Shown piece by piece: positions 11,194 to 64,000 of a DNA stretch of 64,000 nucleotides; the first letter of the stretch is position 1; every line of letters begins with the position of its first letter. The notes beneath the pieces were generated by a model. It did not search any database. It saw nothing but the letters and a program-made list of their open reading frames with translations, and was not told where the DNA came from. The translations under genes were made by a program, and so were the position numbers. Source of the stretch: Podarcis muralis (lineage: Eukaryota); assembly GCF_964188315.1 (NCBI RefSeq), contig NC_135667.1, positions 16,802,001-16,866,000 of the forward strand, in the 5' to 3' direction.

Positions 11194-12525
11194 TTAGGGC
11201 TTGAACTTCCGTTTCTTGGAACTCCTGGAATGCTCAGTGGCAGGGAGGTCTCTCTTCAGAGTCCAACAGTCAGCCATAATGACTGTGTCCCAGCGACCCT
11301 GATACCTGTCTCCATCTCTTTCATGTCCTGATGGAATCTCTCCCCCTGCTCGTCACTCATTGAACCCAGGTTCTCAGGAAACCGGTCCATATGTGAAAAT
11401 AGGTAGTGCATCTTGACGCTCATGTTGCAGCCCAGGTTTCTGAAAGCAGTCAGCATGTTGTTGACAAGTTCTGTGTAGTTTCTGGCCTTATTGTTGCCAA
11501 GAAAGTTCTCCACTACCAGAACAAATGCCTTCCATTCTTCCAGTTCCACTTTGTTCATTGAGTTTCCGAACTCTAGATCTCTGATGAGCTGACGGATCTG
11601 AGGACCGTCAAAGATGCCAGCTTTCAACTTCTCCATGGTCAATCCTGGAAAAGCCTGGCACAAGTAAGTGAAGCAGTCACCATCCTTGTCCAGAGCCTTG
11701 GTGAACTGCTTGATTAAGCTGAGCTTGATGTGCAGTGGTGGGAAGAGTATTCTGCCTCTGTCTACCAGAGGGTCGTTGATGACGTTCCTTTTTCTGCAAG
11801 GCACCAATTCCTCCCGCACAGGCCAGTCCTTCTTCGTGTAATGCTGAGCACGGTCCCTACTATCCCACATGCACAGAAAACATGGGTACTTGGTGAAGCC
11901 AGACTGTTGTCCCAACAAAAAGTTCACCATCTTCAGGTCAACACAAATAAACCACTTATGCTGATCATAACCAATTTTCTCCAGCACATACTTCACCACT
12001 TCATAGTTCTCCTTCAGTGTACTCGAGTGAGCCAGGGGTAAAGAGGCAAACTGGTTGCCGTTGTGTAGCAGAACACATTTCAGTGATCGCTTGCTGCTGT
12101 CAATGGACAGTCTCCAATCTTTGGGTTTGTACTGTGGCACTCCAAGCTTGAGCAGAAGCTGCGCAATATCTACACAGTACACCAAGTCCTTCTCTTCCGA
12201 GAAAAAACGGAGGTACTCTTGATGCCTGTTGCGGAAGAAGCTGATGCGAGCACTGTCAGAGAGGAGGTTTTTTCCCCTTCAATCTGGATGCCAACAGTTT
12301 GGCAGAGTCCTTTGACAAGCTGAGGTCGTGAACTAGATCATTCAACTCCTTTTGGGAAAATGGATGTGGAGCATCATCTTCAAGAACCACTTCTTCTTCT
12401 TCATGTCCATCAACACTGGAGGCATCTTCGTCACTAATGTCAGGAAGTTCTCCAAAGATAGGCACTGGAATTTCATCACAATGAGCTACAGGACGACGTG
12501 CTGATTGAAGATCAGGATACTTCGT
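11194..12525 (-). pseudogene. Chapaev-type DDE transposase remnant, frameshifted
   Basis: KYPDLQSARRPVAH...SKDSAKLLASRL; IDSSKRSLKCVLLHNGN; CVDLKMV; YPCFLCMWDSR; PPLHIKL; HYLFSH; SDEQGERFHQD. A 1-nt frameshift near 11312 precedes YQGRW...MADCW...KRKFKP*. Degraded N-terminal remnants (IKLGDQ) extend to about 12700. Confidence 0.85.
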
Positions 12526-12748: not shown

Positions 12749-14280
12749 GACCCTTTTTAATCTATTTATAAGTGATATGAGGGCGCCTCTGATAGATTCT
12801 CAAGAAACGATCCACGCCCCCCCGTCTTGCCCAATATCGTTGCCCCCTTCTACTCTACGCAGACGACACAGTGATCCTATCTTTTTCAAGAGTGGGCCTT
12901 AGGAGGGCATTAAAAATTTTTGATGCTTACTGCAAATCAAATTTTCTTACAATTAATCATGCAAAGTCCAAAGTCCTAATTTTCACCAAGAGTCGAAAAA
13001 CCTATAATTGGAGAATAGATAGAAAAGCCATCGACCAAGTCTTTAAATTTCAATACTTGGGAGTCCTTCTCCAACACAACATGGGCTGGAAGGTCCATCT
13101 TGCATATGAATTAAATAGAGCTAAAGCCCTTTCCTTTGCGCTACTGCGTTTTTTCTTTTCAGATGGGGCTTTCCATATTCCATCAGTGTTAAAAGTTTTC
13201 AAGGCAAAGGTGATTGCAACAATAGCATATGCAATCCCAATATGGGGGTCCTTTGTTAATCTAACCCAATTGGAGGTAATCCAAAACCAGCTGCTAAGAA
13301 GGTTGCTAAAATTACCCAGGTGTGTAGGCAATACTGCTATACGACTCGAACTAAATGTTACATCTCTAGGAACCACATTATGGAAATGCATCCTCTGTTA
13401 CTGGTTGGCATTATGGCATAAACTTCCAAATCTCCACTTGATACAGTGTCTCTGGAGAGATGACTTCCCTAGCCCTTGGGCAAAAATAATACATGGGAAA
13501 CGTGTGTCCTTAGGACTATCTCCATCTGAACTACTAAAATTGGATTTAATTTCTGCCAAGAGAATTATAACTCACAAATTAGAGGAGATGGATTTACAAT
13601 TTAATATTGCAACAGGTGGTGGCACCTGTTCACCGATAAACCTTGGCTTAACACCACCAACGAAACTTCCATCTTATTTAACTACCTTATCTGTGGTGAT
13701 GCACAGGTATGCCTTTATAAAGGCTAGATTCAATGTTTTCCCATCAAATGTGTTGGGTAACAGACTCTCCAACGGACAGATCTCACTCCTCTGTGACTGT
13801 AAAAGTGGATCTATAGAATCGTTATATCATATAATCTTCTGTTGTCCATTACATTCGGCTTCACGGTCCAAGTTTCTGGCCCCATATTTATTGAGAATTG
13901 CTGACAGACCTCAGGAAGCCCAAATAATATACTTATTAAACGATGAAGACTCAAGTAGATCCCTTGCAGTCGCTAGATACCTGATTAATGTCTTATTTCA
14001 TAAGAGGAGAAATGGATCACTGTATGACTCTGACAGCTTAGCCAAACTTAAGAACCATCAATAAGTGCCAGAACTAAGACGCATATCCCCCAAAATCCGA
14101 GGGATTTGAATTGCGGTTGACATAGAGGGAGCTTATTGTATATAGTGTTTACTTAATTGAAGTAAAATTGGTTTTATATGGGTGTTTTAACTTGGAACTG
14201 TTTAAATTGTTTGTGTATGGATAAATTTTGATGTATTGTTTTAGATATGGGCCAATGGCCGTAATAAATCAAATCAAATC
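12749..14280 (+). mobile_element. 5'-truncated non-LTR retrotransposon (RTE-X-like; clade uncertain) nested in the Chapaev element
   Basis: RT motifs LFNLFISDM and LLYADDTV, then FQYLGV. C-terminal CDC...ESLYHIIFCCP knuckle. ORF open 12871-14064. (AAATC)n tail. TSD (TC)TAAAATGCT at 12738-48 and 14279-89. Confidence 0.85.
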
Positions 14281-18029: not shown

Positions 18030-18786
18030 ATGCCCTCTATCATGGCCGACTGGGGTCTGCACGGCCTTCTCTCGCCACTCCTCCCTGACACCTCGTCTTG
18101 GCGCCCTCGGCCAGAGCCCACCATAGCCGTGCTGGGCTCCCTGGCCTTGCTGTTTGTCTGGTACTGCTACCGCGTGGGGAGCGGGCAAGCGGCCCCTGCC
18201 TCTCACCAGCAGGGCATGCCCACGGAGGAGCGATGCCCTCGCCGTGCCCTCGGGAGCGACGCTGCCAACCAGCGCCTGTATCGCAGCCTGCGAGACTACG
18301 CCAAGCGCTACTCTTGGTCGGGCATGAACCGGCTGCACAAAGGCATCCGAGACCAGGCCCATTACCAGCTGGGCGAGCGCCTGGCGATCCAGAAGCCCAG
18401 CGCCTTCTACCTCCCGGACTTGCCTTCTGCCCCCTACTTCCCCCGCGAGTCCCAGCGCCACGACGTGGAGATCCTTGAACTCAGCTTCCCGGCCATCTTG
18501 CGAGAGTTCGAGGGCATCGCGTGGGACTTTGCGCCTGGAGCGCCAACCCCGCGGGGGTGGACGGCCAATGCCAACCCTGGCTGCCATAGCTATTACCTCT
18601 ACCGGCAAGGGGAGTGCGTGGCGCAGAACTGTCGCAGCTGCCCGTGGACGTACCGGGCACTCAGTGCGCTGCGCACCTTCGTCAATGCCAACCGCTTTGG
18701 AAACGCTTGCTTCAGCGTCTTGCAGCCTGGAACTGTGCTGCCCGGGACCTATGGGCCAACCAACACCCGGGTGCGATGCCATTTAG
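18030..18786 (+). CDS. ASPHD1: ASPHD1 coding exon 1
   Basis: TM segment LALLFVWYCYRVG; YAKRYSWSGM; QKPSAFYLPDLPSAPYFPRESQRHDVE; GPTNTRVRCHLG|gtgag. An in-frame TAA lies at 18015, so the start could differ if an upstream exon exists. Confidence 0.92.
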
Positions 18787-19359
18787 GTGAGCAAATGCTG
18801 GAAGAACAGCAAGGCGGGCAAGATATGGGGGCGTCAGTGTGTGGGGAAGTTTGCAAGGCCAGAGTCTTCCACCATGCATGCATTGTCCACTAGCTGGAAA
18901 TTATTGAGTCCCTAAACAGGTGGCAGAGGACTTCTGTTGTTTATAAGCATCAGAAATAAGTACCCCTCAGGGGTCATTTTGAGGGCTGCAATATATAGTT
19001 GAGTAATCGGTGCCCTAGATCAATCGGCCAACTAGAAAATCTGTTAAATTGTTTGGAATAATGCAAATACTTTCCAAAAAACATGCAGGTGGAAAGTGGC
19101 ATCATAGAAGAGGCATTTCTTCCTGTGCGTGGGAATGCTTCTTCCAGTAAGATTTTGACTCTGCCATGAGACACCTCTAGAAATCAGAAGAATGCTTTCT
19201 TTCTCTTTAGAGCTATATGCTGAAATGTATGATGATTTACGCATCAATTAATCAGCTAAAGCTCATACAGTTAATTAACAATATTTCTTTAAACAGAGCA
19301 GCAGCCCTAATCACTTTATGGCAAAGGAATCTCATAAGACCTTTTCAGAGGCTAGCAGT

Positions 19360-26648: not shown

Positions 26649-26808
26649 CTGCAGCAAAGAGAGAAAAATGGAAATCCGCCCAGCACCAGAAGCCCCTCCC
26701 TCCTTTCCTGTCACCAGCACCATCTCAGATTTTGGATCCTTCCCCAAACTCCCCTTTCAAGTCAAATATTACCCCTCTCCCCGCAAAAAGAAAGACATGC
26801 GCTCTCAC

Positions 26809-27203
26809 TTCTCTTCCTCCTCTTCTTCCTGGTTCTCCAGCTGCCCATCAGATTTATCCTCATCTTCGCTGTCAGGCTCTGGGGTAGGGTTGCGCCGGGG
26901 TAGGATCTCTGCCTGGATCTCTAGAGTCCCCTGGGCAGCAATGAGCTCATAGAGGCGCCGGATCTCCTCAGGGGGAGGCATCCAGCTGTCTGGGGACTCC
27001 AGTTCCTCATCGCTGCAGGGGACGCACCAGTCCTCCTCGGCCGATTCGTCTCCCTTCGCCAACTGCTCCCCATCTCTCTCCCCGGCTGCGTCATCTTGTT
27101 CCTCGGTGGTCGGAGGTAGCTCTGAGGCAGGCTCATCTTCTACTGCCAAGGACTGCATCCCTGAGGTGACTTCACCTTCCTCCACAGTGCTGGCCTCCTC
27201 CAT
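26809..27203 (-). CDS. PAGR1: PAGR1 coding exon 1
   Basis: gcagccATGG (strong Kozak context); [10 protein letters not shown]...[11 protein letters not shown]...[16 protein letters not shown]...EEEEEEK|gtgag. Confidence 0.92.
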
Positions 27204-28645
27204 GGCTGCTGGAGAGACAGAGGCCACAGAACTGAGAGAGGCAGGGCAAACAGGACCCTAACATAACCGGGCAAGGACCTGCCTGGTACAAGACGGCGGC
27301 CATCTTGGGAAACCCCTACAGCAAAATGTGAGCTAGCGTGGTGCAGGAGTGTGGGTGGCTGGTTGTCCCTCGCCTGCAAGATTATCTTTCTCTTTTGGCA
27401 TCAGAGACTCCTCTCCAAACTTTCACATCCTCCAATGAAAGTTTTCTTGGGAGCGCAGAGATGGGGCTCAAAAAGATGAATTGCCAGTGTTTCCAAACTA
27501 ACTCCTTAGATACACCTCTCCTAGTTGCCTGTAGTTGAGGGAGGAGGGTTAGCTGTCATGAAAAGTGTAGAGAAAAATTGTATGTTCTGGGAAGACTTCT
27601 TAGGCCTCCTCTTTCTTGCTGCCTCTGCCAGCAAATTCAGAGACATCTTTGCTCTGTCTCTTAACACCTTTCAGATCAATAATCCATTGATCTGCCCCAG
27701 CCTTCCCATAAATAATGAAGTGGAATTCGCCCCTGTCCAGAGGAAGCGCCCAGATAAAGATCTCTTTGAAGTTGCCAATTGTTATTCATTCTGCCATTCT
27801 GCTGCAAGAAAAACCAGGAAGCCTGTGGCTCATGCCAGGGTAAGAGCAAGGAGGCAGAGGCACAGCAGAGGAAGATGCCTCAGGATGTGCGAATCAGACC
27901 TTATATCAGACTCCAGTCCACTGAGAGATGAATCAAGGTTCTGCTGGCCCATCCTTGCAACCTCCATATCGGAGAAGACCCTCCCACAGCTCCCAGTGTA
28001 TTCCTGGTCAGGGGGGAGACATGATGCCATGAGGAACAACCCCCTTCCCTCTAAGACCATAACTCAGAGATGCTCCATCCAGAGAACCTGTAGAATCAGG
28101 GGACCCCAAAAGCCCTACAGGATCCACCCCACACCCCAGATCTGGACGCAGACACCCTGTGGTCTTATAACTTCATTAAGTGCAACATAAGCCAGTCCAG
28201 AGCTTTACTCAGTCCTGAGGATCCAAAAACTTAACTCCTTCTGATGGAGCTATGTTGCAGTAATGGTAATGGGAGAATTGATTACAAAAAGTGCCAGGGG
28301 TGGGGTTTTGAAGTCCTGAAGTCTCTGCTTTAGACTCCAGAGACAAGCTCCTTACAATCAACTCTGAATGCTATGAAACTGCAAATACATACATATTCTA
28401 GATAGGACGACACTAGCAAGATGAGTCAGATAGCGTCAAGCCATAGTCAGTGTTCTCAACAGGTAAATCCATTCAGGAAGGCCATCCCCCCAGGTTAACT
28501 TCCAGATGAGACAGCCTTGATTTGACTACCTGCCCAATCTCCCAATCCCTAGAAGCTCTCTCATTTTACCCAATCGCCTTTCTGACCCTCGTGCTGGTTC
28601 CTTCTCACTGGTCACATTTTCAGTTCCACTTGACTCACTTTAGAT

Positions 28646-36711: not shown

Positions 36712-37152
36712 GTCTTGGACCTTCTCGAGCCTTCCCTCCGTGACTTGCCAATCCGGGAGGATCAGAATCACCACATTCTGGTGCCTGGTCTGACGGAGAG
36801 AGAGATAACCAGCTTCTCAGACTTTGAGAAACATTTCTTGCCTGCCAGCAGCAACCGTACAGTGGCATCCACACAGCTGAATAATCGCTCGAGCCGCAGT
36901 CACGCTGTCCTGCTGGTGTACGTGAGCCAGACCCGGGGCTGGCCGCCATATGCCCAGCGGGCTGCCAAGCTTTGCCTTATCGACTTAGCCGGCTCAGAGG
37001 ACAACCGGCGGACAGGCAACAGAGGGGTGCGCCTGAAGGAGAGCGGGGCCATCAACACGTCACTCTTTGTGCTTAGCAAGGTGGTGGATGCCCTCAACAA
37101 GGGGCTGCCTCGCGTACCCTACAGAGACAGCAAACTCACTCGCCTGCTGCAG
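36712..37152 (+). CDS. KIF22: KIF22 coding exon 4 (switch I/II)
   Basis: ccccag|GTCTTG...CTGCAG|gtagt; 441 nt containing [18 protein letters not shown] and [11 protein letters not shown]. Confidence 0.95.
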
Positions 37153-37242
37153 GTAGTTGGGGTGCCTGGGTTCATTGGTGGGGCTGTGGATTTGGGAAGA
37201 GCTGCGTTTTATTTTACTGAGCATATTTCTCTTTCCTGAAAG

Positions 37243-41707: not shown

Positions 41708-43250
41708 AATAATAATAATAATAATAATAAATTTATTATTTGTACTCCGCCCATCTGGCTGGGTTTCCCCAGTATATTAAAAACATCAAACATTAAAAAC
41801 TTCCCTAAACAGGGCTGCCTTCATGTTGTTGTTGTTTAGTCGTTTAGTCGTGTACGACTCTTCGTGACCCCATGGACCAGAGCACGCCAGGCACCTCTGT
41901 CCTCCACTACTTCCCGCAGTTTGGTCAGACTCATGCTGGTAACCTCGAAAACACTATCCAACCATCTCGTCCTCTGTCGCCCCCTTCTCCTTGTGCCCTC
42001 CATCTTTCCCAGCATCAGTGTCTTCTCCAGGGAGTCTTCTCTTCTCATGAGGTGGCCAAAGTACTGGAGCCTCAGCTTCAGGATCTGTCCTTCCAGTGAG
42101 CACTCAGGGCTGATTTCCTTAAGAATGGATGCGTTTGATCTTCTTGCAGTCCATGGGACTCTCAAGAGTCTTCTCCAGCACCATAATTCAAAAGCATCAA
42201 TTCTTCGGCGATCAGCCTTCTTTATGGTCCAGCTCTCACTTCCATACATCACTACTGGGAAAACCATGGCTTTAACTATACGGACCTTTGTTGGCAAGGT
42301 GACGTCTCTACTTCTCAAGATGCTGTCTAGGCCTGTCATTGCCCTTCTCCCAAGAAGGAGGCGTCTTTTAATTTCGTGGCTGCTGTAACCATCTGCAGTG
42401 ATCATGGAGCCCAAGAAAGTAAAATCTCTCACTGCCTCCATTTCTTCCCCTTCTATTTGCCAGGAGGTGATGGGACCAGTGGCCATGATCTTCGTTTTTT
42501 TGATGTTGAGCTTCAGACCATATTTTGCGCTCTCCTCTTTCACCCTCATTAAAAGGTTCTTTAATTCCTCCTCACTTTCTGCCATCAAGGTTGTGTCATC
42601 TGCATATCTGAGGTTGTTGATATTTCTTCCGGCAATCTTAATTCCAGCTTGGGATTCATCCAGCCCAGCCTTTCGCATGATGTATTCTGCATATAAATTA
42701 AATAAGCAGGGAGACAATATACAGCCTTGCCGTACTCCTTTCCCAATTTTGAACCAATCAGTTGTTCCATATCCAGTTCTAACTGTAGCTTCTTGTCCCA
42801 CATAGAGATTTCTCAGGAGACAGATGAGGTGATCAGGCACTCCCATTTCTTTAAGAACTTGCCATAGTTTGCTGTGGTCGACACAGTCAAAGGCTTTTGC
42901 ATAGTCAATGAAGCAGAAGTAGATGTCTTTCTGGAACTCTCTAGCTTTCTCCATAATCCAGCGCATGTTTGCAATTTGGTCTCTGGTTCCTCTGCCTCTT
43001 CGAAATCCAGCTTGCACTTCTGGGAGTTCTCGATCCACATACTGCTTGAGCCTTCCTTGTAGAATTTTAAGCATAACCTTGCTAGGGCTGCCTTCATATG
43101 TTCTCTAAAAGTCAGGTAGTTGTTTATTTCCTTGACATCTGAGGGGAGGGCGTTCCACAGGGCGGGCGCCACTACTGAGAAGGCCCTCTGCAGAATGCTG
43201 CAGTGTGATTGCTGACAGGAGTGAGGCCTTGTCAGTGGGTAAAACCTGTG
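41708..43250 (-). mobile_element. L2 LINE 3' end, split by the BovB insertion
   Basis: (TAT)n tail at 41708-32; 3' UTR CCCAGCCAGATGGGCGG; resumes after 43084 with AFSVVAPALWNALPSDVKEINNYLTFR. Confidence 0.8.
41825..43083 (-). mobile_element. 5'-truncated RTE-BovB LINE with an uninterrupted RT reading frame
   Basis: 412-aa ORF with QAGFRRGRGTRDQI, QGCILSP, LRYADDTT and GVTKSRTRLND*; (CAA)n tail; 14-bp TSD AGGGCTGCCTTCAT at 41811-24 and 43084-97. Confidence 0.95.
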
Positions 43251-51416: not shown

Positions 51417-51620
51417 CAGAGCTTTCCAAACTTTTCAAGTTGGTGACACATTTTTTGGACATGCATCATTTCATGACACAGTAATTCAGTTTTACTAGCA
51501 AATTGGAGGTTAAACCAACCCATTCCAGCCCGAAGAGGAGTGCAGGGGAGCATTTGTGCGACATTCCTACACACTGCAGCTGACACACAAACGTGTTGCA
51601 ACGCAGTTTGGAAAACTCTG
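51417..51620. mobile_element. hAT non-autonomous element
   Basis: TIRs CAGAGCTTTCCAAAC / GTTTGGAAAACTCTG; perfect 8-bp TSD CCCTACTC at 51409-16 and 51621-28. Confidence 0.9.
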
Positions 51621-51705
51621 CCCTACTCCATCTAATCCAAGCCCCTTTGCAAGTATTGTGGTTTGGGAAGGCCTCCCTGCTCAATTTCTGTTTCTGCAGG
51701 TGGTT

Positions 51706-51967
51706 ATGTCAGCTGAGGCCACGGCAGACCAGGTCCCACCCCTGGAGAATTGTGCCCCGCTAGTCCCAATCCAGCAGCGACGGGATGGCGGCGGAGGGGT
51801 AGCTGGTGTGACCTTTGATCTCAAACCCCTTAACCCCAGCAGCAAGTATGTCAAGCTGAACGTGGGAGGGTCTCTGCATTACACCACAGTGCAAACCCTC
51901 ACCAAGCAAGACACCATGCTGAAGGCTATGTTCAGTGGCAGGATGGAGGTGCTCACAGATAGTGAAG
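51706..51967 (+). CDS. KCTD13: KCTD13 coding exon 1
   Basis: Acceptor at 51699/700, ATG at 51706; [42 protein letters not shown]; G|gtaagt. Confidence 0.93.
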
Positions 51968-52524
51968 GTAAGTGTCTCTCCACTCAACCCTTCTCCCAAT
52001 CCAGGTTTCCTGCTCAGCTGAGATTATATGGTATACTAAAATAAATAAACTTTAATACTTTTTGGACCAAAAGCCCCCAAAGCCGTGAACAGCACTACTG
52101 CATTTTAAAGAAATATATAGGAAAAGTGCAATGCATGTAATATCAAAGTGATATTAAAAAATAGCAAGAAAATTCAGTCAAGAATATAAATGATGTAATA
52201 GGAACTAGTTATCAATAAGTGTGGCACATTGGAGGCGACAGAAATCTGCCATTCTATATGGCTTCTTTGCAGAAGCAAAAAAATCAGAACTACCTCACAC
52301 CTGCTTCTGATAGGATGAACAGTGAACCCCAGGGGGAAAATTCAGGTTCATATTTTTAAAAGATATGAGCAGCTTTCTAGTCAAAGACAATGTTTGATAA
52401 CTTGGTATCAAGGATCTGTTACAGCTAGAAGCTTACATTTTGTTTGTGAGATAAAATATCCTAAATTTCCTCAAGGACCTATCCTAAATACCTCAATTAC
52501 CACCTCCTTCCATATGAACCTACC

Positions 52525-52879
52525 CAAACCCTGAGATCATCCTCTTAGGCCCTTCTTTGTGTGCCTTCTCCACAAGAGGTCTGCAGGGTGGCAACACGAG
52601 AGCAGGCCTTTTCTGTAGTGGCTCCCCACTTGTGAAATGCTCTCCCCAGGGAGGTTCGCCTGTCGCCTTCATTATACACCTTTAGGTGCCAGGCAGAAAC
52701 GTTGCTTTTTGACCAGGCCTTTGGTTGACTGACATTCAGTGCCCTTTTTAAATGTGTTGGTGGGGTTATTGGGTTGTTACTGTTTTTATTTTGATTATGT
52801 ATTCTGTGTTTCTATATCACGATTTTATCCTGTGAACTGCCCTGAGACCGGCAGGTATAGGGCGGTATACAAATTAAAT
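52525..52879 (+). mobile_element. L2 LINE 3' end
   Basis: RAFSVVAPHL*NALPREVRLSPSLYTFRCQAETLLFDQAF; CTGCCCTGAGACC...GGGCGGTATACAAAT. Confidence 0.8.
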
Positions 52880-53239
52880 GTTGTTGTTGTTTAGTCGTGT
52901 CCGACTCTTTGTGACCCCATGGACCAGAGCATGCCAGGCACTCCTGTTTTCCACTGCCTCCCACAGTTTGGTCAAACTCATGCTGGTAGCTTTTAGAACA
53001 CTGTCCAACCATCTCGTCCTCTGTCGTCCCCTTCTCCTTGTGCCCTCCATCTTTCCCAACATCAGGGTCTTTTCCAGGAAGTCTTCTCTTCTCATGAGGT
53101 GGCCAAAGTATTGGAGCCTCAGCTTCAGGATCTGTCCTTCCAGTGAGCACTCAGGGCTGATTTCCTTAAGAATGGAGACTCTCAAGAGTCTCCTCCAACA
53201 CCATAATTCAAAAGCACCAATTCTTCGGCGATCAGCCTT
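52880..53239 (-). mobile_element. Short 5'-truncated BovB with a 27-bp internal deletion
   Basis: KADRRRIGAFELWCWRRLLRV[del]SILKEISPE...KSRTRL; (CAA)n tail; TSD AAATTAAAT at 52871-79 and 53241-49. Confidence 0.92.
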
Positions 53240-53451
53240 CAAATTAAATAGAAAATAAAATATTGTAGCTTCATTAGCAAAATTATATACAAAGACAGAA
53301 ATGTTTGGATTTCCCTCTAAATGTTTTAAAGCGTTCTCCAGAACAGAGCTACTTTTAATTTTATGTGCAAGAGATCCTTCTCTCCTGGTCTCTGCTTCTG
53401 CCCCCCAAAGACCTTTTGTTCAGATACTAAAATTCTGTTCTTCCTTTCCAG

Positions 53452-53621
53452 GCTGGATCTTGATTGACCGAAGTGGGCGCCATTTTGGAACCATCCTGAA
53501 CTACTTGCGCGATGGCTCTGTCTCTCTCCCTGAATCCCAGCGGGAGCTGGAAGAAGTGCTATCTGAGGCCCGGTACTACTTGATCCAAGGCTTGGTTGAG
53601 GACTGTCAGCTTGCCCTGCAG
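53452..53621 (+). CDS. KCTD13: KCTD13 coding exon 2
   Basis: ttccag|GCTGG...CTGCAG|gtgag; [21 protein letters not shown]. Confidence 0.95.
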
Positions 53622-54061
53622 GTGAGCTGGTCACCTGCTGAGCAGTTAGGAGGCAGGCAGACTCCTCTGAGCCTCAAGCAGTTTGAAGGAACTGGGGAGA
53701 CGAAGAGGTGAGTTAGTAAGGCCCACTTGCCTTAGCCTGATTTGGACGACCTGCTACTTGGCCTCTCCCTCTCAGAACTGTCTCCCGCAGTGATTGTTCC
53801 ATCTGGTGGTTGTAACCATCATGCAACATTATCTAAAAACTGATTCCCCCGTTTGCATATTTTTCTTCTTCCTCCCCATCCTTCCACCCTTATTTTGTTA
53901 ATGTGTTAAATAAACTGTATGTCATTTGTTTTAATTTATAAACGTCCATGAGTGCACTGGTAAAAAGGCAGTACATAAGTGTGGTATGTTAATAATATGT
54001 GGCATGTTCTAGGGCGTCTAATAAGGTTGTAATATATTTGTATGTATCTTTTTCTGCCTAG

Positions 54062-55793: not shown

Positions 55794-56036
55794 GTGGAGT
55801 TCCCAGAGGCACGGATCTTTGAGGAAACCCTGAACATCCTGATCTACGAGACGCCACGAGTGCCAGACAAGGCCCTCCTGGAGGCAACAGGTGGGGTGGC
55901 GGGTGGGGGTGGAGGCCCCCTCCGTGCAGGTGACGACGAAGATGGGCGGGAGCACCGTGTCCGGCGCATACATGTCCGTAGGCACATCATGCATGATGAA
56001 CGTCCTCACGGCCACCAAGCTGTTTTCAAAGACTGA
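55794..56036 (+). CDS. KCTD13: KCTD13 terminal coding exon
   Basis: gcacag|GTGGAG; VEFPEARIFEETLNILIYE...AVFKD*. Confidence 0.95.
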   Translation: MEFPEARIFEETLNILIYETPRVPDKALLEATGGVAGGGGGPLRAGDDEDGREHRVRRIHVRRHIMHDERPHGHQAVFKD

Positions 56037-59000
56037 TCCCGCCTCGCTCGCAATGTCCTCATTACTCCATCCATTTAGTGCCAAAGGAGGACCTGTTTTC
56101 TCCTTTTGATCTTTCACCTCAAGGTCTTCTCATTGATGTTTGCATCCTTTTCTAACCTCTCTCCCCCTCTGGGCTGCTTTTCTGCCCTCTTGCTATCCCT
56201 TGACTTTATTAAGCCCTCCTTTTTATTGTGACAATTGACCTCTTGGTCTGCCCCTTCATTTTACTGGCATGCTCTTTCCAGCTGTTAAACCCGACTTCCC
56301 CTCACCACCCCACCTGTCTCATAATCTGCAAGACACCACTGAAACCTGGTTTGTGGTCCTTTATTCAAAACCTCTTGACCCTGAACCTTTCCAACCTGAG
56401 ACCGACTGACTCTTAACTGTCCTCTAAACTTAGGATCCATGGAAAACAACATTATAACTGAGAGAGCTATATGTGAGCAAAGCATATGAATCAGGGGAGC
56501 CTACATTCCATCTCAGCTTAATACTGGGCCTCTGGTGACTTCCATTTTGTAACACTGTTATTGGCCTCTTTCAAAGGTCACAGACGAGGTGCTACCTAGA
56601 CAGGGGTGTGTCAGTTCTTACATATTTACCAACTTTGATCTCTCCATTCTGGAGTCTTCTGCCCTTTGCTTTATGGTACATAGTTGTTTTTTTATTGGTC
56701 AACCCCCAACCCACCCTTGGTTTCTGTTCGCCTACTTTTAACTTCTCTGTTGAAGAAACTGGCTGGATTTAAGATAATGCATAAATTGTTCAGACAAAAA
56801 CTGGCTACACTCCATTTAAAATTTTTGATAATGGCATTGACATAACTGGGATTATACAACATACTTATTAGTGTCTTTTTTTCTGGAATAATTTCCACTA
56901 CATTTAGCCTCCTGTGAGCAAAGGAGATTAAATCCAGTGTTAATCAGCCACTTAAAAAATTCATGCATACAAACTTGGCACCTTTAACCTTTGCATTAGA
57001 GCAGGAGGTAACAGTCGTGAAATTGGTTCTTATTACTTATTGTCCTTCTGGGAAAGATGTCAGTCAGATAACAGCTGCTATTTTAATTTTTTTTGTCTGG
57101 GTCAAAAACACAGTTTGACTGTCTCCTTAGGTGTTGTGTGACCTGGACCCTGATTCCATCCAAACTATTCTGTCCCACTTACAGGTACGACTTATATCAA
57201 AATATGTTAGATGCTTCAATCCCACACTTCATAGGCATCTACACACCATTACAAAACAGCGGAACATGGTCAGGTGACTCCCTTCAGACATAGATCTTGT
57301 AGGTACAGAAGTCTTACTTCTTCCTGCAGAGTTTGAGCACTTGCACTCTGCCCCCGGAATGCCTTCACCCCCTTGTTTTCCATGAGGTTGGGTGGAGGGG
57401 GAATCGGGGGTCCTCCAGAATACATTGGCCTACCAACTCCCATCAGCCCCAGCCAGCATGGCCAGTGATCTGGTTTGATGGGAGTTGTAGTCCATCCATA
57501 ACTGAAGGGCCACCATTTCCCCATCCTGCCACAGGGATGCCGCTTCATACAAACTTCAGCAAAGTGTAATATGGGACATTTCAACAGCCCTTTCAGTCAC
57601 CTGTCTCATGGAACAGGGTTTGGATATTAATGGTGGTGGATGGAGAGGGAGGGTGAAATTGCATTCTGTAAATGCAGACTGGTGCAGGTAACTTTACTGG
57701 AGAGAAGGTATTATTTTCCTCCATTCTTCTTTTCCCATCTCTATATCCTCCCCTCCCTGGAGGAGGTAACTTTCTTGAATTAATTATTGTAATTTTTTGT
57801 ATTTGCATAATTTATTTTAAAAATGTTTTTTTTCTATTAAGTTATTGTAATAAAGGTACCTGCTTAAAAATGGGGAAGTTTCCTGGTGTTTGTTTTAACT
57901 GGACAAGGATCTGTATCTCCAGGGCTTTTCCATGCCTGGACAGGCACATTTCCCAAAGAATATTAGTGACTTTAGTGAGCTGGATCATCCTTTTTTCTAA
58001 CCCAGGGGGTTGTGTTTATTGGACAATTACAGTTGCTAAAGAGGAAGGAGTTTTTGGCATAGTTGGCAGCACATGTGTGAAATCTTACCTTGCTAACACT
58101 TGGGCAGCTTCTCTGTTCATCTGCTGCCTGTGGCTTGCATTTTAGGAACCTAAAATTTAAGGTGGGTGCAGGTTTTCTCCAATTCTCCCCTTCTGTATTG
58201 TAGCAATGGAGAGCGTTTCAGCAGTCTGGTGGATGCCTTGGATTTTGTGAAGAGAGATGCTTATGGGGAAGGGGATCTGTATGTTGAGTGCCTCAGGCCA
58301 GAGGAAATGGAAGATCTACTGGCATTATCCAGACTGCTGGTATTTAATTGGAGAACATTATAGTGTGCCTGTCTTTCTATAATAGTATGCCTTGATTCAT
58401 ACTAGTTGATGGCAGCTGCTGCTGTAACTGGGGCCTTGGAGAAGAAGCAGAAGGGCTGGGCAGGCTTGAGGGGCTACAATGTAGTGGCTGGATGAGTGTT
58501 TTAATTTTAAGAAACCATATTTTGGTAACTTGGTATTCCTGCTTCCATATCTTGGTAGTTTCCTATCTCGTCTCGTACCCAGGGAAGAAGAGTCAGGCAG
58601 AGGTACGTTGCTAGTATAGATCTCATACTAGGATTAAACAAAGGCTTTTGCCCATTCAGAGCAGAACCCACTGTTTACAATGTATCTCAATCTAATAGGC
58701 AGCTGAGCCTTACACTAGTTTCTGCATTTTAACTCTGCATCCTCCTGTGCCAGAACATCTTATGTAGCTTCCTTCCCTGTGTGGTTGATTCTTCTAAATA
58801 TAAACAGCTATGATACAAAAAGTTAATCCTTAACAATGATCTACACCTTTCCAGTTGTCAAGGGTTAAAGTAGCAAAACCATATTGGCCTTGAGGGAATG
58901 AAGTTAACAAACCTTAGATTACTATGCTGTAAATTAGTCTTCTCTCAGCTGCAATTAGGCTGTGCTTAGCTTTGTTAATAGCAATTGCCCAACAGTATAA

Positions 59001-59379
59001 AAAAACCTGAAATTTGCAAAATGACCCAATGCCTACCCTAGTAGTGCTGCACAGTATCTGCAGTTTTTTTGTATTACTATATTATTTAAACATGAAACAC
59101 CTAGTGTTGCAGTTAAGTGATGATAAACTTTTAACCCTTATATGTACACTGTAGTTTGCAATCAATCTGCAAACAATCTCTACTTATTTTTTATATATAA
59201 AAGCAAGCCCCACTAAGCTCTATGTGAGCCACCACCAAGTATATTATTTATGATGCTATTTAAAGTATTTTTACCCTACCCTTCAGCCGACCAAGGCACC
59301 CAAAGCAGTTTACAGTAATGAGTAATATGGTCCCCTCCTTTACAATCTAAAACACCAAAGGAAACGAGATTGGAAGGTG

Positions 59380-60600
59380 GGGAGCATGAGGGCTGCGGCC
59401 CTGACTTGGGAGTAAGCCCCACTGAATTTAATGGCGCTTACTTCCGAGCAGACATGGCAGGGTTTGCAGCTTTAGTTGCGAAATCCTTACAGCTGTTATT
59501 CCTAGGACTGAGCGGGGCCGAAGCAAGAGTCCTGTGGCTGCTACTCACTTTGGTTTATGGATGGGGCCAAGTCGGTCTCACCCTTTCCATAATGTTCTTC
59601 GAGGGCGGCACGGGGAGCAGCCTATATATGAGAAAATATATAAAATTATACGGCGGGGGGGTGGGAAAGCACACGGTGCTTTTAAACTCCACAAGAAAAA
59701 CGCAACCAACCCAATTGTACGAAAGAAAGGGGCGGGTCAAAGAGTGAAGAAGCAAAGAAGAGGGAGGAGGGGGGAAAAAAAGCAACTCCCTCTAGTCACG
59801 TGATAGACGAAGTGATCACATGACAGAGGGCGGGTCACGCGGCACGGTTACCTCCCCGGAAGCTACGGCGCTTTGAGGATCAGGTGACCAGAGGAGGCCA
59901 AAGGGGGAAACCGGTCACGTGGCGGGGGCTGGCTGGGTGAATGTGCCGGGCGGGCTTGGCTGAATCGCCTGGGCCTGAGGAAGGTGAAGGGAGGAGAGCG
60001 GGGCTGGAGCGCAGGGGGGCCGCCTTGTAGTTGGGGGGCAGCCGGCCAGAGGCAAAGCGGGCAGCCGGGGCTTTGGGCGGAAGCGAAGGGGCTCCTTGAG
60101 TTAGGGCCTTCCTGGGGAGGTTCTCTTTTTTTTAATTTAAAAAAAGGAAAAAGGATCCCCCTTCAGGCGGAGGGTTCCTGGCTGTGATTTTGAGAGCGTC
60201 AGGCTGGGCCTAGAGTTATCTGAGCTCTGACGAAACAAGGGCCCCAGTTGACGGAACCGGGAAAGCGAGGCCGAAAAGGTTGGGAAAGACTGCGGAGGAA
60301 GTTTGCGACCCCAAAAGCGGGGGCGGTAGATCTGGGCTGGTGGGGTTTTTTTTTAATAAAAAAGGAAAGACTACGGGAAGCAAAGCTGTTAGCAAAGGTT
60401 GCGGGGTGGGTGGGAGTCGCCTCGAGTGTGGGGGTGTAAGCAAGGGAAAAAGCCTTTTTTTGCTGCTCGTAAGGAAGAAAGCTTCTGTTACGGTTGTAGG
60501 GAGGTGCCGCGTTTGGGGCTGGATCCTTGGGTTGGTTGGTTTTTCAGCCGGGAAGCGCTAACTGGGGTGGGTGGGGTACCGTAGGGCAGACAGACAGCTA
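59380..60600 (+). promoter_or_regulatory. CpG-island promoter of the NUFIP2-like gene with CLEAR/E-box motifs
   Basis: GTCACGTGAT 59795, ATCACATGAC 59815, GTCACGTGG 59914, GC box, ETS site CCGGAAG; candidate donor CAG|GTGACC at 59883/84. Confidence 0.65.
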
Positions 60601-61030
60601 AAACGGAAAACGAGGGGGCAACTTCCTCCCGAAGTTTTATACAGGTGTTTGTATACAGCGTAGGGTGTTAAAGCCCAAGCTGCAGAGGTGGAAAGGAGTG
60701 TAGGTATACAAATAGAAGTAGTTTCCTTTGGTTCTTTAAGCTGCTGTAGCATTTCAGAAGTTGGGGAGCTCTGCGGGGTACCTGGCAACTTTCTCTGCCA
60801 CTGAGGTGACTTTTGCGGCTGCAAGAGAGTGAATAGCTTTCAGGCACAGGCTACTAATTTGCAGTGCAGGGAAACAGAGGAAGAGTAGAGTCGCTGGGCA
60901 CGCTGTGGTGTTTTGCTTCAAAAGGAGGCTGAGAGCAAGACTGTAGTCAGGACTCTGGGGTTTAGGAATACCTTCCACATCCTCGAAGCTCTATTGCTGT
61001 TGAGATCTGCATCACACACAGTCAGAGGCC

Positions 61031-61142
61031 ATGCAGAAGGAGGAGCTGGGAATGGATGAAAATCGCAACCCAGAGGAGGAGCTGCGTCTCCTCGGTGGAA
61101 AGAAGGAAAAATGCCACAACCTCAGCAACCGCATCCGGACAG
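61031..61142 (+). CDS. NUFIP2-like coding exon 1
   Basis: gaggccATGC; MQKEELGMDENRNPEEELRLLGGKKEKCHNLSNRIRT G|gtaac; phase 1 joins 63289, echoing the human NUFIP2 KKKTG|YGELNG junction. Confidence 0.62.
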
Positions 61143-63288
61143 GTAACTTAAACTGCATCCAGTATTTTATCTTCTACGAAGTCACTTCTACGAAGTCACC
61201 TCTGGTCCTCCAGAAGGTGTTGGACTCCAACTCCCATGAGCACTAAGTCAGCATGACCATTGGTCAGGGATGATGGGAGATGTAGCCCAGCAACATCTGG
61301 AGAGCCACAAGTTCCCCAACCCTTCACCATCGCCAACTCAAGACTGGCTACTAAAAACCCAGCTTCTTGAGCACCCAGAGCTTTGGTGTTGGTACTTAGC
61401 ATTTTGAAACATTTCCTTTAGTTCCCAATGACCTCAGCTGATCCTTGCCCTTATCAATCCATTCACACACCTCAAACTCCTTGCATGCATCTGTTATCCA
61501 TGTAATCCTAAACTGAACTCCTGGGACAAGCAAGCTTTTTTCACCACTAGAGCGCATCCTTATTTCAATTTCCTTTACCTCAGCCCTATAGTGTCTACTT
61601 GATTTGTGGAGCTGTGAACCCCCATCCCCCAAGCTAAGTTTCCTGCTCCCCCCCCAAAAAAATCCAGACAACCCATGTTGGAAATCCTACTGCATCTCCA
61701 CAGAATCATGCAGACCTGTCCCTTACCTGGTAAATCTCAACTTACTGGATCACACTCCCTTTCCAGAGTTTGTTTCCTTTTCCTTACTGGGGCGGGTCCT
61801 ATTTGGTTATTAATTCAGTGGCTCTGGTTTGATTAACTGCCTTTTGTAACATGCATCTAAGTTCTAGCTATCCTTAATGCATCTAAATGTTGAAAATAAA
61901 ACCTTCTTTCTGTCACGCAGGGGGTGGAGCAGAGCTGGGCTACAGGCCAAGCCAGGTCTCCAGAGAAGGTGTGTTGTACTGAACTGGGATTGGGCTTTCC
62001 CCTTTTCCTTTCTGTCATGCTTTTTCTGCATGTTTTTCCGTTCCAGAGGTGGCTGCACCTCAGTGCTGGGTGAGGTACATTCATCCTGCGAACCTAGAGC
62101 CCTGAATGCCCACCCTCTATGCTCCCCATCTGCTCTTCCCTGTTGAAAAGATGTGGAGAAGAAGTGATTATCTGCCACCGTGCTTCTTTACTAGATACTA
62201 GTTTACTAGTTTGGAAAAAGTAGCATGTTCTTCATATCCCTTTCCTCCTCCTGTTACACTCCTGGGGTATACTTAGGAGAGGAATGAAGACCTACAGATG
62301 GGAAAACAATGACTTTAATTCTCTGGGCAGCAAGCCCAGAGCTCAGTGGCTTACAGGAAGGGATCCTAGAATTATTGGGAAAGGGTTTGAGGAACCTGAA
62401 ATTGGTTAGGGCTTGAGAGAAGGGAACTCATAGGTTTGAATTCTTCAGCATAAACACTTCTGGTTCCGTTCCCCCCCTTTGCTCATCACAATGTAGAGAA
62501 TCTTAGAAACCCGAAGACAGAATGTTTTGAATGCTAAATAACCAGAAAAGCGGGGAGTAGGCTAAACCAACCTCAGAAGTGGTATTTTCATATGATCTCC
62601 TGATGTTGCTGAACTACAACTTCTGTCAGCCCCTGTCAGTATGGCCATAAAGATGCAAAATGTAGTTCAGCAGTTTCTGGAGGGCAAAAGGTTCCTTGTA
62701 CTTGTCTTAGAGTTTATAATTCATTAATAAATATCAGAAGACAGAAGAGGAATCTCTCTCCCCCCCCCCCCCCATTTTATTGACTAAAGATCACTGTTTT
62801 GGAATTGACTGAGTTAGCAGCACGGAGAGGGGTTTTGAAATCACTTAAGTGATGTGAAGTTTTTAGCCACCTGCACACCCCAGATAAACGACCTCAAGGG
62901 TATTTTAACCCCATGGGCTATCTGCCTTATCTATGACCTGTTGACCCCAAACTGAGAGAGGTGAATGTGTCTGCATTCCAGATAAATGAAAACCAGAAAT
63001 ATGTTCAAATATTTAGATATCATATTTAAGCACCTTTTAATCCCCCAACTTTCTTACCAAAACTCCAAACAGTAACTGAGCAGTCTGGTATTTTGGGAGG
63101 GTTGGAATGAACTGCGCTGAGGCACCATTTTTGTTGATGGTGCACTTGACAAGAGTTAACATAAGCTCCCTACCTGCCGAAATAAAAAATGGGGTTGCTG
63201 CTCTGAGATGCTTACATTCTAGGTGTGTGAAGTGACAAAGGGATGTGAGGCAGGCATGGTCTTCACCCTTCCTCTTCTTCCTCTTCAG

Positions 63289-64000
63289 GTGCCTGGGAGT
63301 CCAACGGGTATACCGCTCCCTCTGAGATAGCTGACGAACCCAGTGTTCCCCTGAGCCCTTCCAACAGCCTCAACATCCGCAACCTCCAGTTGTCTGAGCG
63401 GGACCCTCCTGTTGCCCACCATCCCCACCGCTACCCTCATCGCTTTTACCATGCCCGCCCCTTCCATGCTACAGCGTACCGCAAGACCTACCGAGGCAGC
63501 CCCTCAGACCGCAAGGAATGGGGACCTAGCACAAACGGCCACCACTGTGCTCCTGAGAGCATCTCCAACGGGAGGTGGCAGCACCGGCGCCGTGGCTATT
63601 CCGACCCACCCTCCCCGTCGTCGTCTCCCGAATCCGAACGAGGCAGCACCGTCAAAGCCAGTGAGAAGCCTGCCGCCACATCTAATGCCGCCAACACAGC
63701 CAACGAGGATTCTGGGAAGGAAACATGGTCGCTCTTCCGGCCACTTCCCGCTTTCCCTGTCGATAGCAGCAGTGCCCGGATCATCCCCAAGATCTCTTAT
63801 GCCAGCAAGCTGAAAGAGAACCTGGATCAACCGGGGAAAGCCTGCCATGTTCCTGCCTCAGCCGTCCGCACCACCAATAGCCTCCCCAACTGTGTCTTGG
63901 CGCCACCCCCAAGTAGCCCCCCGCCATCTGACAGCAGTCGGCGACAGCACCTGGGAGCCATCTTTCAGAATGAGTGGGGCCTCTCCTTTATCAACGAGCC
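63289..64000 (+). CDS. NUFIP2-like coding exon 2 (continues past the window)
   Basis: ctcttcag|GT GCC TGG GAG...; stop-free for 236 codons; WSLFRPLPAFPVDSSSARIIPKISYASKLKENL (63726-63824) and LGAIFQNEWGLSFINEP (63951-64000). Confidence 0.88.

What the first reader, a model, noticed from the sequence alone, without database searches (positions are those of the whole stretch)
61031..64000. Hidden NUFIP2 paralogue (probable ohnologue) beside KCTD13, apparently lost from mammalian 16p11.2
Seen: an exon at 63289-64000 with a strong acceptor and 236 stop-free codons, missed by the ORF track because it has no Met. It carries WSLFRPLPAFPVDSSSARIIPKISYASKLKENL and LGAIFQNEWGLSFINEP, and splices in phase to a short ATG exon at 61031. 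Recalled: human NUFIP2 has WTLFKPPPVFPVDNSSAKIVPKISYASKVKENL and a GDIFQNQWGLSFINEP-like motif. It lies at 17q11.2 with SEZ6, TNFAIP1 and TAOK1, the paralogues of 16p11.2 SEZ6L2, KCTD13 and TAOK2, and I know of no second human copy. Inferred: this is the second copy from whole-genome duplication, retained in this lineage. It lacks the long poly-His N-terminus, is much shorter before the first motif, and has an RHY-rich stretch (HHPHRYPHRFYHARPFH). It would be an uncharacterised stress-granule/DDX6-type RNA regulator.
Basis: partly seen in the sequence, partly recalled or inferred. Interest (0 to 1): 0.82.

Follow-up and report, generated by a model that had tools for sequence, protein, structure and literature searches.

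The report
Second NUFIP2 gene beside KCTD13
Next to KCTD13 this lizard-type genome carries a real, transcribed and strongly conserved gene for a short second copy of the stress-granule protein NUFIP2; the copy is older than the shark/bony-vertebrate split, was not found in mammals, birds or crocodilians, and sits in public gene catalogues without ever having been studied.

Summary
An ATG exon (61031-61142) splices in phase to a long open exon (63289 to the window end). The product matches Pfam NUFIP2 (E 5e-24) and is identical to a catalogued 344-aa protein, so the gene is not hidden. RefSeq and UniProt list it across squamates, turtles and amphibians as "uncharacterized LOC" or "NUFIP2-like". 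I found no paper on it.

It is a true paralogue:
- Canonical NUFIP2 coexists with it in the same species.
- A maximum-likelihood tree splits the two clades at 100/100 support, and each clade runs from sharks to tetrapods.
- All three intron positions are shared.
- The short copy lies by KCTD13, TMEM219 and KIF22, while canonical NUFIP2 lies by a beta-crystallin gene.

This fits a pre-gnathostome, probably 2R, duplication.

The gene is under purifying selection (dN/dS 0.067 against Sceloporus), and spliced transcripts exist in a squamate, turtles and Xenopus.

The protein is predicted disordered but keeps three NUFIP2 modules:
- the block inside the Roquin/FMRP-binding fragment;
- the ..GLSFINEP block, whose Phe is reported to contact G3BP1;
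- a C-terminal helix.

The likely role, inferred and not shown, is an RNP/stress-granule adaptor. No member was found in mammals, birds or crocodilians. Interest is moderate.

The parts
59600..60600 (+). CpG-rich stretch upstream of the ATG exon. Possible promoter or 5' UTR region of the NUFIP2-like gene (weak evidence).
   Evidence: GC is 0.49-0.64 and CpG o/e 0.57-0.82 in 200-nt bins, against 0-0.3 in the flanks. Window 59855-59990 aligns to the Sceloporus upstream region at 76.5%. Not tested further.
61031..61142 (+). Coding exon 1 (Met1 to the first base of Gly38), followed by donor GT at 61143.
   Evidence: It is 97% identical in protein to Sceloporus exon 1 and identical to the start of catalogued protein P0001.
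61696..62204 (+). The only intron stretch alignable with Sceloporus. It surrounds the cassette exon.
   Evidence: blastn gives 71% over 519 nt. Sliding identity peaks at 96% over 61893-61942.
61921..61968 (+). Alternative in-frame 48-nt cassette exon, flanked by AG and GT. It adds 16 residues (GGAELGYRPSQVSREG) and gives the 360-aa isoform.
   Evidence: It is 48/48 nt identical to Sceloporus L008:11022-11069. Isoforms with and without it are annotated in geckos, skinks and iguanians. No counterpart was found in turtle, frog or paddlefish introns.
63289..64000 (+). Large coding exon, cut by the window end. It covers residues 38-274 of the 344-aa protein.
   Evidence: dN/dS against Sceloporus is 0.067 over 289 codons.
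63348..63404 (+). Block specific to the short clade (PLSPSNSLNIRNLQLSERD).
   Evidence: Nearly invariant from lungfish to squamates in the short clade. Only loosely alignable to canonical NUFIP2.
63417..63467 (+). His/Tyr/Arg-rich low-complexity stretch.
   Evidence: H/Y-rich runs occupy this position in all tetrapod short-clade members. Canonical NUFIP2 has its H/Y run at the N-terminus instead.
63726..63824 (+). Family motif 1 (W184-L216).
   Evidence: Most columns are invariant across 39 family members. It corresponds to residues 335-367 of 695-aa mammalian NUFIP2, inside the 255-411 fragment that binds Roquin-1 and FMRP (PMC5775257).
63951..64000 (+). Family motif 2 (L259-P275, last codon cut by the window end). 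Phe271 is at 63987-63989.
   Evidence: Invariant columns. It corresponds to residues 502-515 of 695-aa mammalian NUFIP2. F511 of human NUFIP2 is reported as the G3BP1 NTF2L contact (bioRxiv 10.1101/2025.11.30.691455). AlphaFold2 predicts a beta-hairpin at pLDDT about 70.
51556..53711 (+). Context: BTB-domain exons of the upstream neighbour KCTD13.
   Evidence: Pfam BTB_2 hits on both ORFs. The best solved-structure match is BACURD1/KCTD13, 4uij. The same BTB_2 gene sits upstream of the orthologue in Sceloporus, Hemicordylus and a turtle.

Best explanation
This is the 5' three-quarters of a functional protein-coding gene. It has an ATG exon, an optional 48-nt cassette exon and a large exon; two small terminal exons lie beyond the window. 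It encodes a 344- or 360-aa, largely disordered protein that is the second gnathostome paralogue of NUFIP2, called here 'NUFIP2-like'.

Origin. The duplication that produced it predates the split of cartilaginous and bony vertebrates and copied the gene with its introns. Its position in the KCTD13/TMEM219/KIF22 block, against canonical NUFIP2 in the CRYBA1/TAOK1 block, makes the vertebrate 2R whole-genome duplication the most likely source. It is retained in sharks, chondrostean and probably teleost fishes, coelacanth, lungfish, amphibians, turtles and squamates. It was not found in mammals, birds or crocodilians.

Function (inferred, not shown). The protein is a compact version of NUFIP2 that keeps its three conserved short modules. 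It probably works as a cytoplasmic RNP/stress-granule adaptor:
- motif 2 (..GLSFINEP, Phe271) docks on the NTF2-like domain of G3BP;
- motif 1 lies in the segment that binds FMRP or Roquin in NUFIP2;
- the C-terminal helix is shared with NUFIP2, with an unknown partner.

It lacks NUFIP2's poly-His/Gln N-terminus and most of its linkers.
For: Shown here:
- Family membership: Pfam PF15293, E 5e-24.
- Exact match to catalogued protein P0001 and its orthologues.
- Coexistence with canonical NUFIP2 in the same species.
- The short clade and the canonical clade split at UFBoot/SH-aLRT 100/100, each with chondrichthyan, actinopterygian and sarcopterygian members.
- A profile of the short clade gives members at least 216 bits and canonical proteins at most 213, with no bird, mammal or crocodilian member.
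- Identical intron positions in both paralogues: after ..TG, after YH(T/L)x, then an 11-codon micro-exon.
- Synteny.
- dS 0.60, dN 0.040, omega 0.067 with bootstrap interval 0.04-0.11.
- Complete spliced ORFs on short Logan contigs: a squamate (P0332, 2.2 kb), turtles (P0017 cluster) and Xenopus (L002, L003).
- AlphaFold2 gives pLDDT below 50 for 211 of 344 residues. Only the 305-328 helix is confident, and the motif 2 hairpin is moderate.

From papers:
- NUFIP2 255-411 binds Roquin-1 (KD 182 nM) and FMRP 1-132 mutually exclusively (PMC5775257).
- NUFIP2 F511 mediates G3BP1 NTF2L binding (bioRxiv 10.1101/2025.11.30.691455).
- Both sites map onto motifs that are invariant in this protein.
Against: - No binding, localisation or phenotype data exist for any member of the short clade, so the function is transferred from the paralogue.
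- The residue mapping to human numbering uses 695-aa non-human mammalian orthologues as a proxy.
- Motif 1 is the only conserved block inside 255-411, but the papers did not map binding to it.
- The spacing between motifs 1 and 2 is 45 residues here against about 135 in NUFIP2, and the short clade evolves about two to three times faster. Partners may therefore differ.
- WGD as opposed to an older or local duplication is not proven. No invertebrate outgroup was found, the single hagfish sequence is a long unstable branch, and neighbours of canonical NUFIP2 were seen only in one bird.
- The canonical copy of this very genome was not seen, only those of close relatives.
Confidence: 0.85

Rival explanations
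1. An ancient paralogue made by a small-scale (segmental) duplication before the gnathostome radiation rather than by the 2R whole-genome duplication. Its place in the 16p11.2-type block would then be coincidental or secondary.
For: The tree shows only that the duplication predates crown gnathostomes. Only two paralogues exist, not up to four. No outgroup dates the node. The hagfish sequence is unplaced.
Against: The two copies sit in blocks known to be paralogous: KCTD13, SEZ6L2 and TAOK2 against TNFAIP1, SEZ6 and TAOK1 (established knowledge). The short copy's neighbours are stable from shark (KIF22) to turtle and squamates (KCTD13, TMEM219).
Confidence: 0.12
2. A decaying or non-functional relic (pseudogene) of a NUFIP2 duplicate.
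For: The protein is short, fast-evolving and mostly disordered. The last 70 codons of this genome's copy were not seen in the window.
Against: Omega is 0.067 at dS 0.60. The ORFs are intact, with conserved splice sites, in dozens of species across roughly 450 My of divergence (established dating). Spliced transcripts exist. P0001 is a complete catalogued product identical to the window's exons.
Confidence: 0.02
3. It is simply this genome's NUFIP2 orthologue, or a recent squamate-specific copy or retrocopy of it.
For: Some databases name members 'FMR1-interacting protein NUFIP2' (Bombina, Pituophis).
Against: Separate canonical NUFIP2 proteins of about 640-715 aa occur in the same squamate, turtle and amphibian species, on other chromosomes. 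There is a 100/100 clade split. The introns are retained at homologous positions, so it is not a retrocopy. Orthologues exist in sharks and lungfish.
Confidence: 0.01

Closest known systems
NUFIP2 (82-FIP, FMR1-interacting protein NUFIP2; Pfam PF15293)
   Same: It shares the same Pfam family, motif 1, motif 2 including the Phe equivalent to human F511, and the C-terminal helix plus DPxR..Y block. The three intron positions are the same. Both are largely disordered.
   Different: It is half the length (344 or 360 aa against about 650-715). It has no poly-His/Gln N-terminus. It has its own N-terminal blocks (DENxNPEE, WESNGY, PLSPSNSLNIRN) and ends in DGKG instead of DxPDQ. The motif 1 to motif 2 linker is 45 residues instead of about 135. 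It evolves faster. Its locus is different (KCTD13-TMEM219, not CRYBA1-TAOK1). It was not found in mammals, birds or crocodilians.
Catalogued orthologues: Anolis carolinensis LOC100562769, Sceloporus LOC121932743, 'FMR1-interacting protein NUFIP2-like' (Anolis sagrei, Tiliqua, many frogs), Xenopus XB5854344 / LOC100145486, and cod 'Si:ch211-214j24.10'
   Same: It is the same gene, at 83-96% identity within squamates and 37-58% to turtles and frogs. It has the same exon structure and the same two isoforms.
   Different: Nothing but species. These are automatic models with no study behind them: the literature searches for these names returned nothing. Several are misnamed or fused to TMEM219.
Short-linear-motif ligands of the G3BP NTF2-like domain (USP10, Caprin1, UBAP2L, alphavirus nsP3)
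   Same: This is a 'works like' comparison only. All are disordered proteins that present a Phe-centred peptide. The equivalent NUFIP2 peptide is reported to bind NTF2L and to dissolve stress granules when expressed alone.
   Different: There is no sequence homology to those ligands, and binding of this protein was not tested.

Membership tests
NUFIP2 family (Pfam PF15293) | Profile HMM match above the curated gathering score | tested here: met
   85.5 bits against a cut-off of 27, E 5e-24, on the partial exon alone.
NUFIP2 family (Pfam PF15293) | Conserved motif 1 (W.LF.P.P.FPVD.S.A...PKISYASK.KENL), motif 2 (IFQN.WGLSFI..P) and the C-terminal YH...DP.R..Y block | tested here: met
   There are 32 invariant columns across 39 short-clade and canonical sequences, clustered in these blocks. 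The C-terminal block is seen in P0001 but lies beyond the window.
NUFIP2 family (Pfam PF15293) | Shared gene architecture: small 5' coding exon, one large exon, an 11-codon micro-exon and a short last exon | tested here: met
   Intron positions coincide in Sceloporus, turtle, Xenopus and paddlefish short genes and in Tiliqua, turtle and owl canonical genes.
Canonical NUFIP2 orthologue group | Groups inside the canonical clade | tested here: not met
   It falls in the separate short clade, with a 100/100 split.
Canonical NUFIP2 orthologue group | About 600-720 aa with a poly-His/Tyr/Gln N-terminus | tested here: not met
   It is 344 or 360 aa and has no such N-terminus.
Canonical NUFIP2 orthologue group | Locus beside CRYBA1/TAOK1 | tested here: not met
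   It lies beside KCTD13, whereas owl canonical NUFIP2 lies by a Crystall gene.
2R ohnologue pair | The duplication node predates the chondrichthyan/osteichthyan split | tested here: met
   Both clades hold sharks, ray-finned fishes and sarcopterygians.
2R ohnologue pair | The two copies lie in paralogous chromosome blocks | tested here: inconclusive
   For the short copy this is shown across shark, turtle and squamates: KIF22, KCTD13, TMEM219, plus ASPHD, PAGR1 and KIF22 in the window. For the canonical copy only a CRYBA1-type neighbour in one bird was seen. The paralogy of the two blocks rests on established knowledge of human 16p11.2 and 17q11.2.
2R ohnologue pair | A single pre-duplication gene in invertebrate chordates or cyclostomes dates the node to 2R | not testable with these tools
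   No invertebrate homologue appeared among 1.84 billion representatives. One hagfish sequence sits on a long, unstable branch.
G3BP NTF2L-binding stress-granule proteins (functional class) | Phe-centred peptide that binds the NTF2-like domain | not testable with these tools
   The residue equivalent to human NUFIP2 F511 is conserved as Phe271. This is sequence conservation only, with no binding assay.

The most novel reading that the evidence does not exclude
The short paralogue is not a redundant NUFIP2. It may be a natural low-valency competitor. It keeps the G3BP-docking and FMRP/Roquin-docking peptides but lacks most of NUFIP2's other regions. It could therefore cap these nodes and tune or suppress stress-granule and Roquin/FMRP complexes in fishes, amphibians, turtles and squamates. 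The squamate-specific, nucleotide-invariant cassette exon would add a regulated isoform switch. Independent loss in mammals and archosaurs would then mark a rewiring of the granule network.
Probability: 0.15. Interest if true: 0.6.

Novelty: new member of a known kind. Interest (0 to 1): 0.35.

Why it matters
NUFIP2 is treated in the literature as a single-copy vertebrate gene. One recent paper even calls the unrelated NUFIP1 its paralogue. It is studied as a partner of FMRP, Roquin, G3BP1, ATXN2L and DDX6.

A second, half-sized family member exists in widely used models such as Xenopus and Anolis, and probably zebrafish. It keeps just the conserved docking peptides. That makes it a natural minimal version for working out which NUFIP2 modules do what. 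It is also a possible confounder or compensator in NUFIP2 knock-outs in non-mammalian models.

In evolutionary terms it adds one more pair to the 16p11.2/17q11.2 paralogon and a clean case of differential ohnologue loss. It does not bear directly on the human 16p11.2 copy-number region, because no mammalian copy was found.

Tried and rejected
- The exact-sequence contig look-up of the window's own product (P0001) and of the Tiliqua isoform X2 (P0003) found nothing on record. The exons beyond the window and this genome's downstream genes therefore could not be read. Sceloporus, Hemicordylus and Crotalus loci were used instead.
- The flanks of the Xenopus tropicalis short gene showed only an NDK gene.
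- The flanks of canonical NUFIP2 in Tiliqua and Carettochelys held no gene within 10 kb, so these were uninformative for synteny. The shark locus came without DNA.
- Literature searches for 'NUFIP2-like', the zebrafish clone name, the Xenbase id and LOC numbers returned no paper.
- This scan's own notes had nothing on NUFIP2, TAOK or TMEM219 in this genome.
- The AlphaFold2 model is too disordered (mean pLDDT 52, pTM 0.22) for a meaningful fold search, so none was run.
- The protein-atlas look-up only repeated the NUFIP2 family.
- I considered and rejected three readings: sole orthologue, retrocopy and pseudogene (see rivals).
- I did not search mammalian or human sequence for a relic. No tool here holds those genomes.
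Full report
**1. What is in the sequence**

The window shows an ATG at 61031 with an in-frame stop 11 codons upstream. A 112-nt exon follows, ending at 61142 before GTAACT. A pyrimidine-rich acceptor ends at 63288. From 63289 (phase 1) an open frame of 236 codons runs to the window end. There are no N in 56000-64000.

The large exon alone matches Pfam PF15293 (NUFIP2) at 85.5 bits, E 5e-24, against a gathering score of 27. That protein is P0001, whose names the tool masks as the window's own. About 70 residues lie beyond the window.

A second isoform of 360 aa (P0002, and P0006 of Sceloporus) contains 16 extra residues. These are encoded in the window by an AG/GT-flanked 48-nt cassette exon at 61921-61968.

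**2. It is an annotated but unstudied gene**

Searching 5.8 billion clustered proteins with the exon found orthologues of about 300-410 aa in several groups:
- squamates: Tiliqua 93%, Salvator 92%, Sceloporus 89%, Naja 83%;
- turtles: 46-58%;
- many frogs: 37-42%.

Cluster listings add Anolis carolinensis LOC100562769, Anolis sagrei 'FMR1-interacting protein NUFIP2-like', Pogona, Varanus, geckos and about 15 snakes. So the gene is not 'hidden'.

An exhaustive HMMER pass over 1.84 billion representatives found only 39 clusters in the whole family. Naming them revealed further short-type members in a caecilian, a salamander, a lungfish, the coelacanth, paddlefish and sturgeon, a basking shark, and a cod fragment named after zebrafish si:ch211-214j24.10.

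Several models are misnamed (formin-like 7, ZC3H18, SFPQ-like, GPI-anchored protein 58) or fused to TMEM219. Full-text searches for 'NUFIP2-like' and for the clone, Xenbase and LOC identifiers returned no paper.

**3. Paralogue, not orthologue**

A search with a frog canonical NUFIP2 returned canonical proteins of about 570-715 aa from the very species that carry the short gene. These are Tiliqua, Salvator, Naja, Carettochelys, Pelusios, Xenopus tropicalis, Hymenochirus, Bombina, Geotrypetes, Pleurodeles and Latimeria. In Tiliqua and Carettochelys the two genes are on different chromosome-scale records.

A quick tree of 53 proteins and a careful IQ-TREE run of 45 proteins (LG+C20+F+G4) both split the family into a short clade and a canonical clade. 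Support in the careful run is UFBoot/SH-aLRT 100/100. Each clade contains cartilaginous fishes, ray-finned fishes and sarcopterygians in roughly species-tree order, and the window's protein sits among the squamates. The duplication therefore predates crown gnathostomes. Branches in the short clade are about two to three times longer.

A profile of the short clade separates members (at least 216 bits) from canonical proteins (at most 213 bits). It added two more sharks, the axolotl and more caecilians, but no mammal, bird, crocodilian or tuatara.

**4. Same gene architecture**

Mapping proteins onto fetched loci shows coinciding intron positions in short genes (Sceloporus, turtle, Xenopus, paddlefish) and canonical genes (Tiliqua, turtle, owl):
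- one after the ..(K/R)(T/A)G that precedes the xxE.NG block;
- one after YH(T/L)x;
- an 11-codon micro-exon;
- a last exon beginning (D/A)PxR.

A retrocopy is excluded. The duplication was at the DNA level.

**5. Synteny**

In the window the upstream gene on the same strand has BTB_2 exons whose best solved-structure match is BACURD1/KCTD13. Further upstream lie an ASPHD-type hydroxylase, PAGR1 (PAXIP1_C) and a kinesin motor, which I read as KIF22.

| Species | Arrangement |
|---|---|
| Sceloporus, Hemicordylus | BTB_2 gene (+), then short gene (+), about 5-8 kb apart |
| Kemp's ridley turtle | Short gene between the BTB_2 gene and TMEM219 |
| Crotalus adamanteus | A fused model joins the short gene to TMEM219 within 23 kb |
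| Scyliorhinus torazame | Neighbour is a Kinesin+HHH_3 protein, which I read as KIF22 |
| Tawny owl (canonical NUFIP2) | Lies next to a beta-crystallin gene, as human NUFIP2 lies next to CRYBA1 (established knowledge) |

The short gene thus belongs to the 16p11.2-type block and the canonical gene to the 17q11.2-type block. These blocks are known to share SEZ6L2/SEZ6, KCTD13/TNFAIP1 and TAOK2/TAOK1. This makes 2R the most economical origin. I could not date the node with an outgroup: no invertebrate homologue was found, and the hagfish branch is unstable.

**6. Functional gene**

Against Sceloporus, 289 aligned codons give dS 0.60, dN 0.040 and omega 0.067, with a bootstrap interval of 0.04-0.11. 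The introns are unalignable except for 61696-62204 around the cassette exon. That exon is 48/48 nt identical, and identity peaks at 96% there.

Complete, spliced ORFs occur on short Logan contigs:
- a skink-like squamate (P0332, 345 aa on 2.2 kb);
- emydid-type turtles (the P0017 cluster);
- Xenopus (L002 and L003, 405 aa on 2.1 kb, against a 5.5-kb genomic span).

Salamander and lungfish ORFs sit on 2-4 kb contigs despite their giant genomes. I have no transcript from this species itself.

**7. How it probably works (inference)**

AlphaFold2 with a 39-sequence alignment predicts disorder: mean pLDDT 52, with 211 of 344 residues below 50. The exceptions are a confident helix at 305-328 and a moderate beta-hairpin at motif 2.

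Conservation across both paralogues is concentrated in three places:
- motif 1 (residues 184-216; window 63726-63824);
- motif 2 (259-275; window 63951 onward);
- the C-terminal block.

In 695-aa mammalian orthologues, used as a proxy for human numbering, motif 1 is at 335-367 and motif 2 at 502-515.

Rehage et al. showed that NUFIP2 255-411 is necessary and sufficient for direct binding of Roquin-1 (KD 182 nM), and that the same fragment binds FMRP 1-132 in a mutually exclusive way (PMC5775257). Motif 1 is the only conserved block inside that fragment.

A 2025 preprint maps G3BP1 NTF2L binding to NUFIP2 F511 (10.1101/2025.11.30.691455). That residue is the Phe of ..GLSFINEP, invariant here as Phe271 (window 63987-63989).

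The most likely role is therefore a compact RNP/stress-granule adaptor that docks on G3BP and on FMRP/FXR or Roquin. Whether it bridges them like NUFIP2 or competes as a cap is open. The poly-His/Gln N-terminus is absent. A His/Tyr/Arg-rich run lies at 63417-63467, and clade-specific N-terminal blocks are conserved from lungfish to squamates.

**8. Verdict**

The gene is catalogued, so it is not hidden. What seems undescribed is:
- its status as an ancient second NUFIP2;
- its phylogenetic distribution;
- the apparent losses in mammals and archosaurs;
- the retention of exactly the mapped partner-binding peptides.

Differential ohnologue loss is common, and the function is inferred only, so interest is moderate.

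Noticed in passing
window 61921-61968 (flanks 61696-62204): The squamate-only 48-nt cassette exon is identical at all 48 nt to Sceloporus, although synonymous divergence in the same gene is 0.60. Its flanks are the only alignable intron sequence. This suggests nucleotide-level constraint, such as splicing regulation. No counterpart was found in turtle, frog or paddlefish.
   Followed up: partly
L008:23259-24626; L013:25905-26772; L012:25552-27115 (beyond the window end): A single-exon Harbinger-transposase-derived ORF (455 aa, PF04827 plus DDE_Tnp_4) lies about 8-10 kb downstream of the NUFIP2-like gene in Sceloporus, Hemicordylus and Crotalus. Identity to Sceloporus is 96.5% aa over 289 residues in Hemicordylus and 90-93% in Crotalus, where the match is split over several frames. 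It sits between NUFIP2-like and TMEM219 and is absent from the turtle locus. It looks like a domesticated transposase conserved across squamates.
   Followed up: partly
window 1-56000: Gene order differs from the human 16p11.2 order. Here the order is CUB-type ORFs that I take for SEZ6L2 (-) (no Pfam hit), an ASPHD-type gene (+, 18030-18893), PAGR1 (-, 26805-27227), a kinesin motor, probably KIF22 (+, 36715-37239), then KCTD13 (+, 51556-53711). KCTD13 is on the same strand as the NUFIP2-like gene in squamates but on the opposite strand in the turtle, which implies a local inversion.
   Followed up: partly
window 41836-43074 (-), 52874-53242 (-), 12871-14064 (+), 11256-12185 (-): Transposable-element ORFs: an RTE/BovB-like reverse transcriptase with a shorter second copy, another LINE reverse-transcriptase fragment, and a transposase-like ORF.
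   Followed up: no
window 59600-60600: A CpG-rich stretch (CpG o/e up to 0.82) contains a 136-nt block (59855-59990) that is 76.5% identical to Sceloporus. It is probably the promoter or 5' UTR of the NUFIP2-like gene.
   Followed up: partly
public protein records (P0066, P0087, P0040, P0039, P0319-P0327, P0309, P0085): Orthologues of this gene carry misleading automatic names: formin-like protein 7, ZC3H18, SFPQ-like, GPI-anchored protein 58 and IGFBP-3 receptor isoforms. Others are fused into larger models, including a TMEM219 fusion in Crotalus and a 4254-aa coelacanth model.
   Followed up: no
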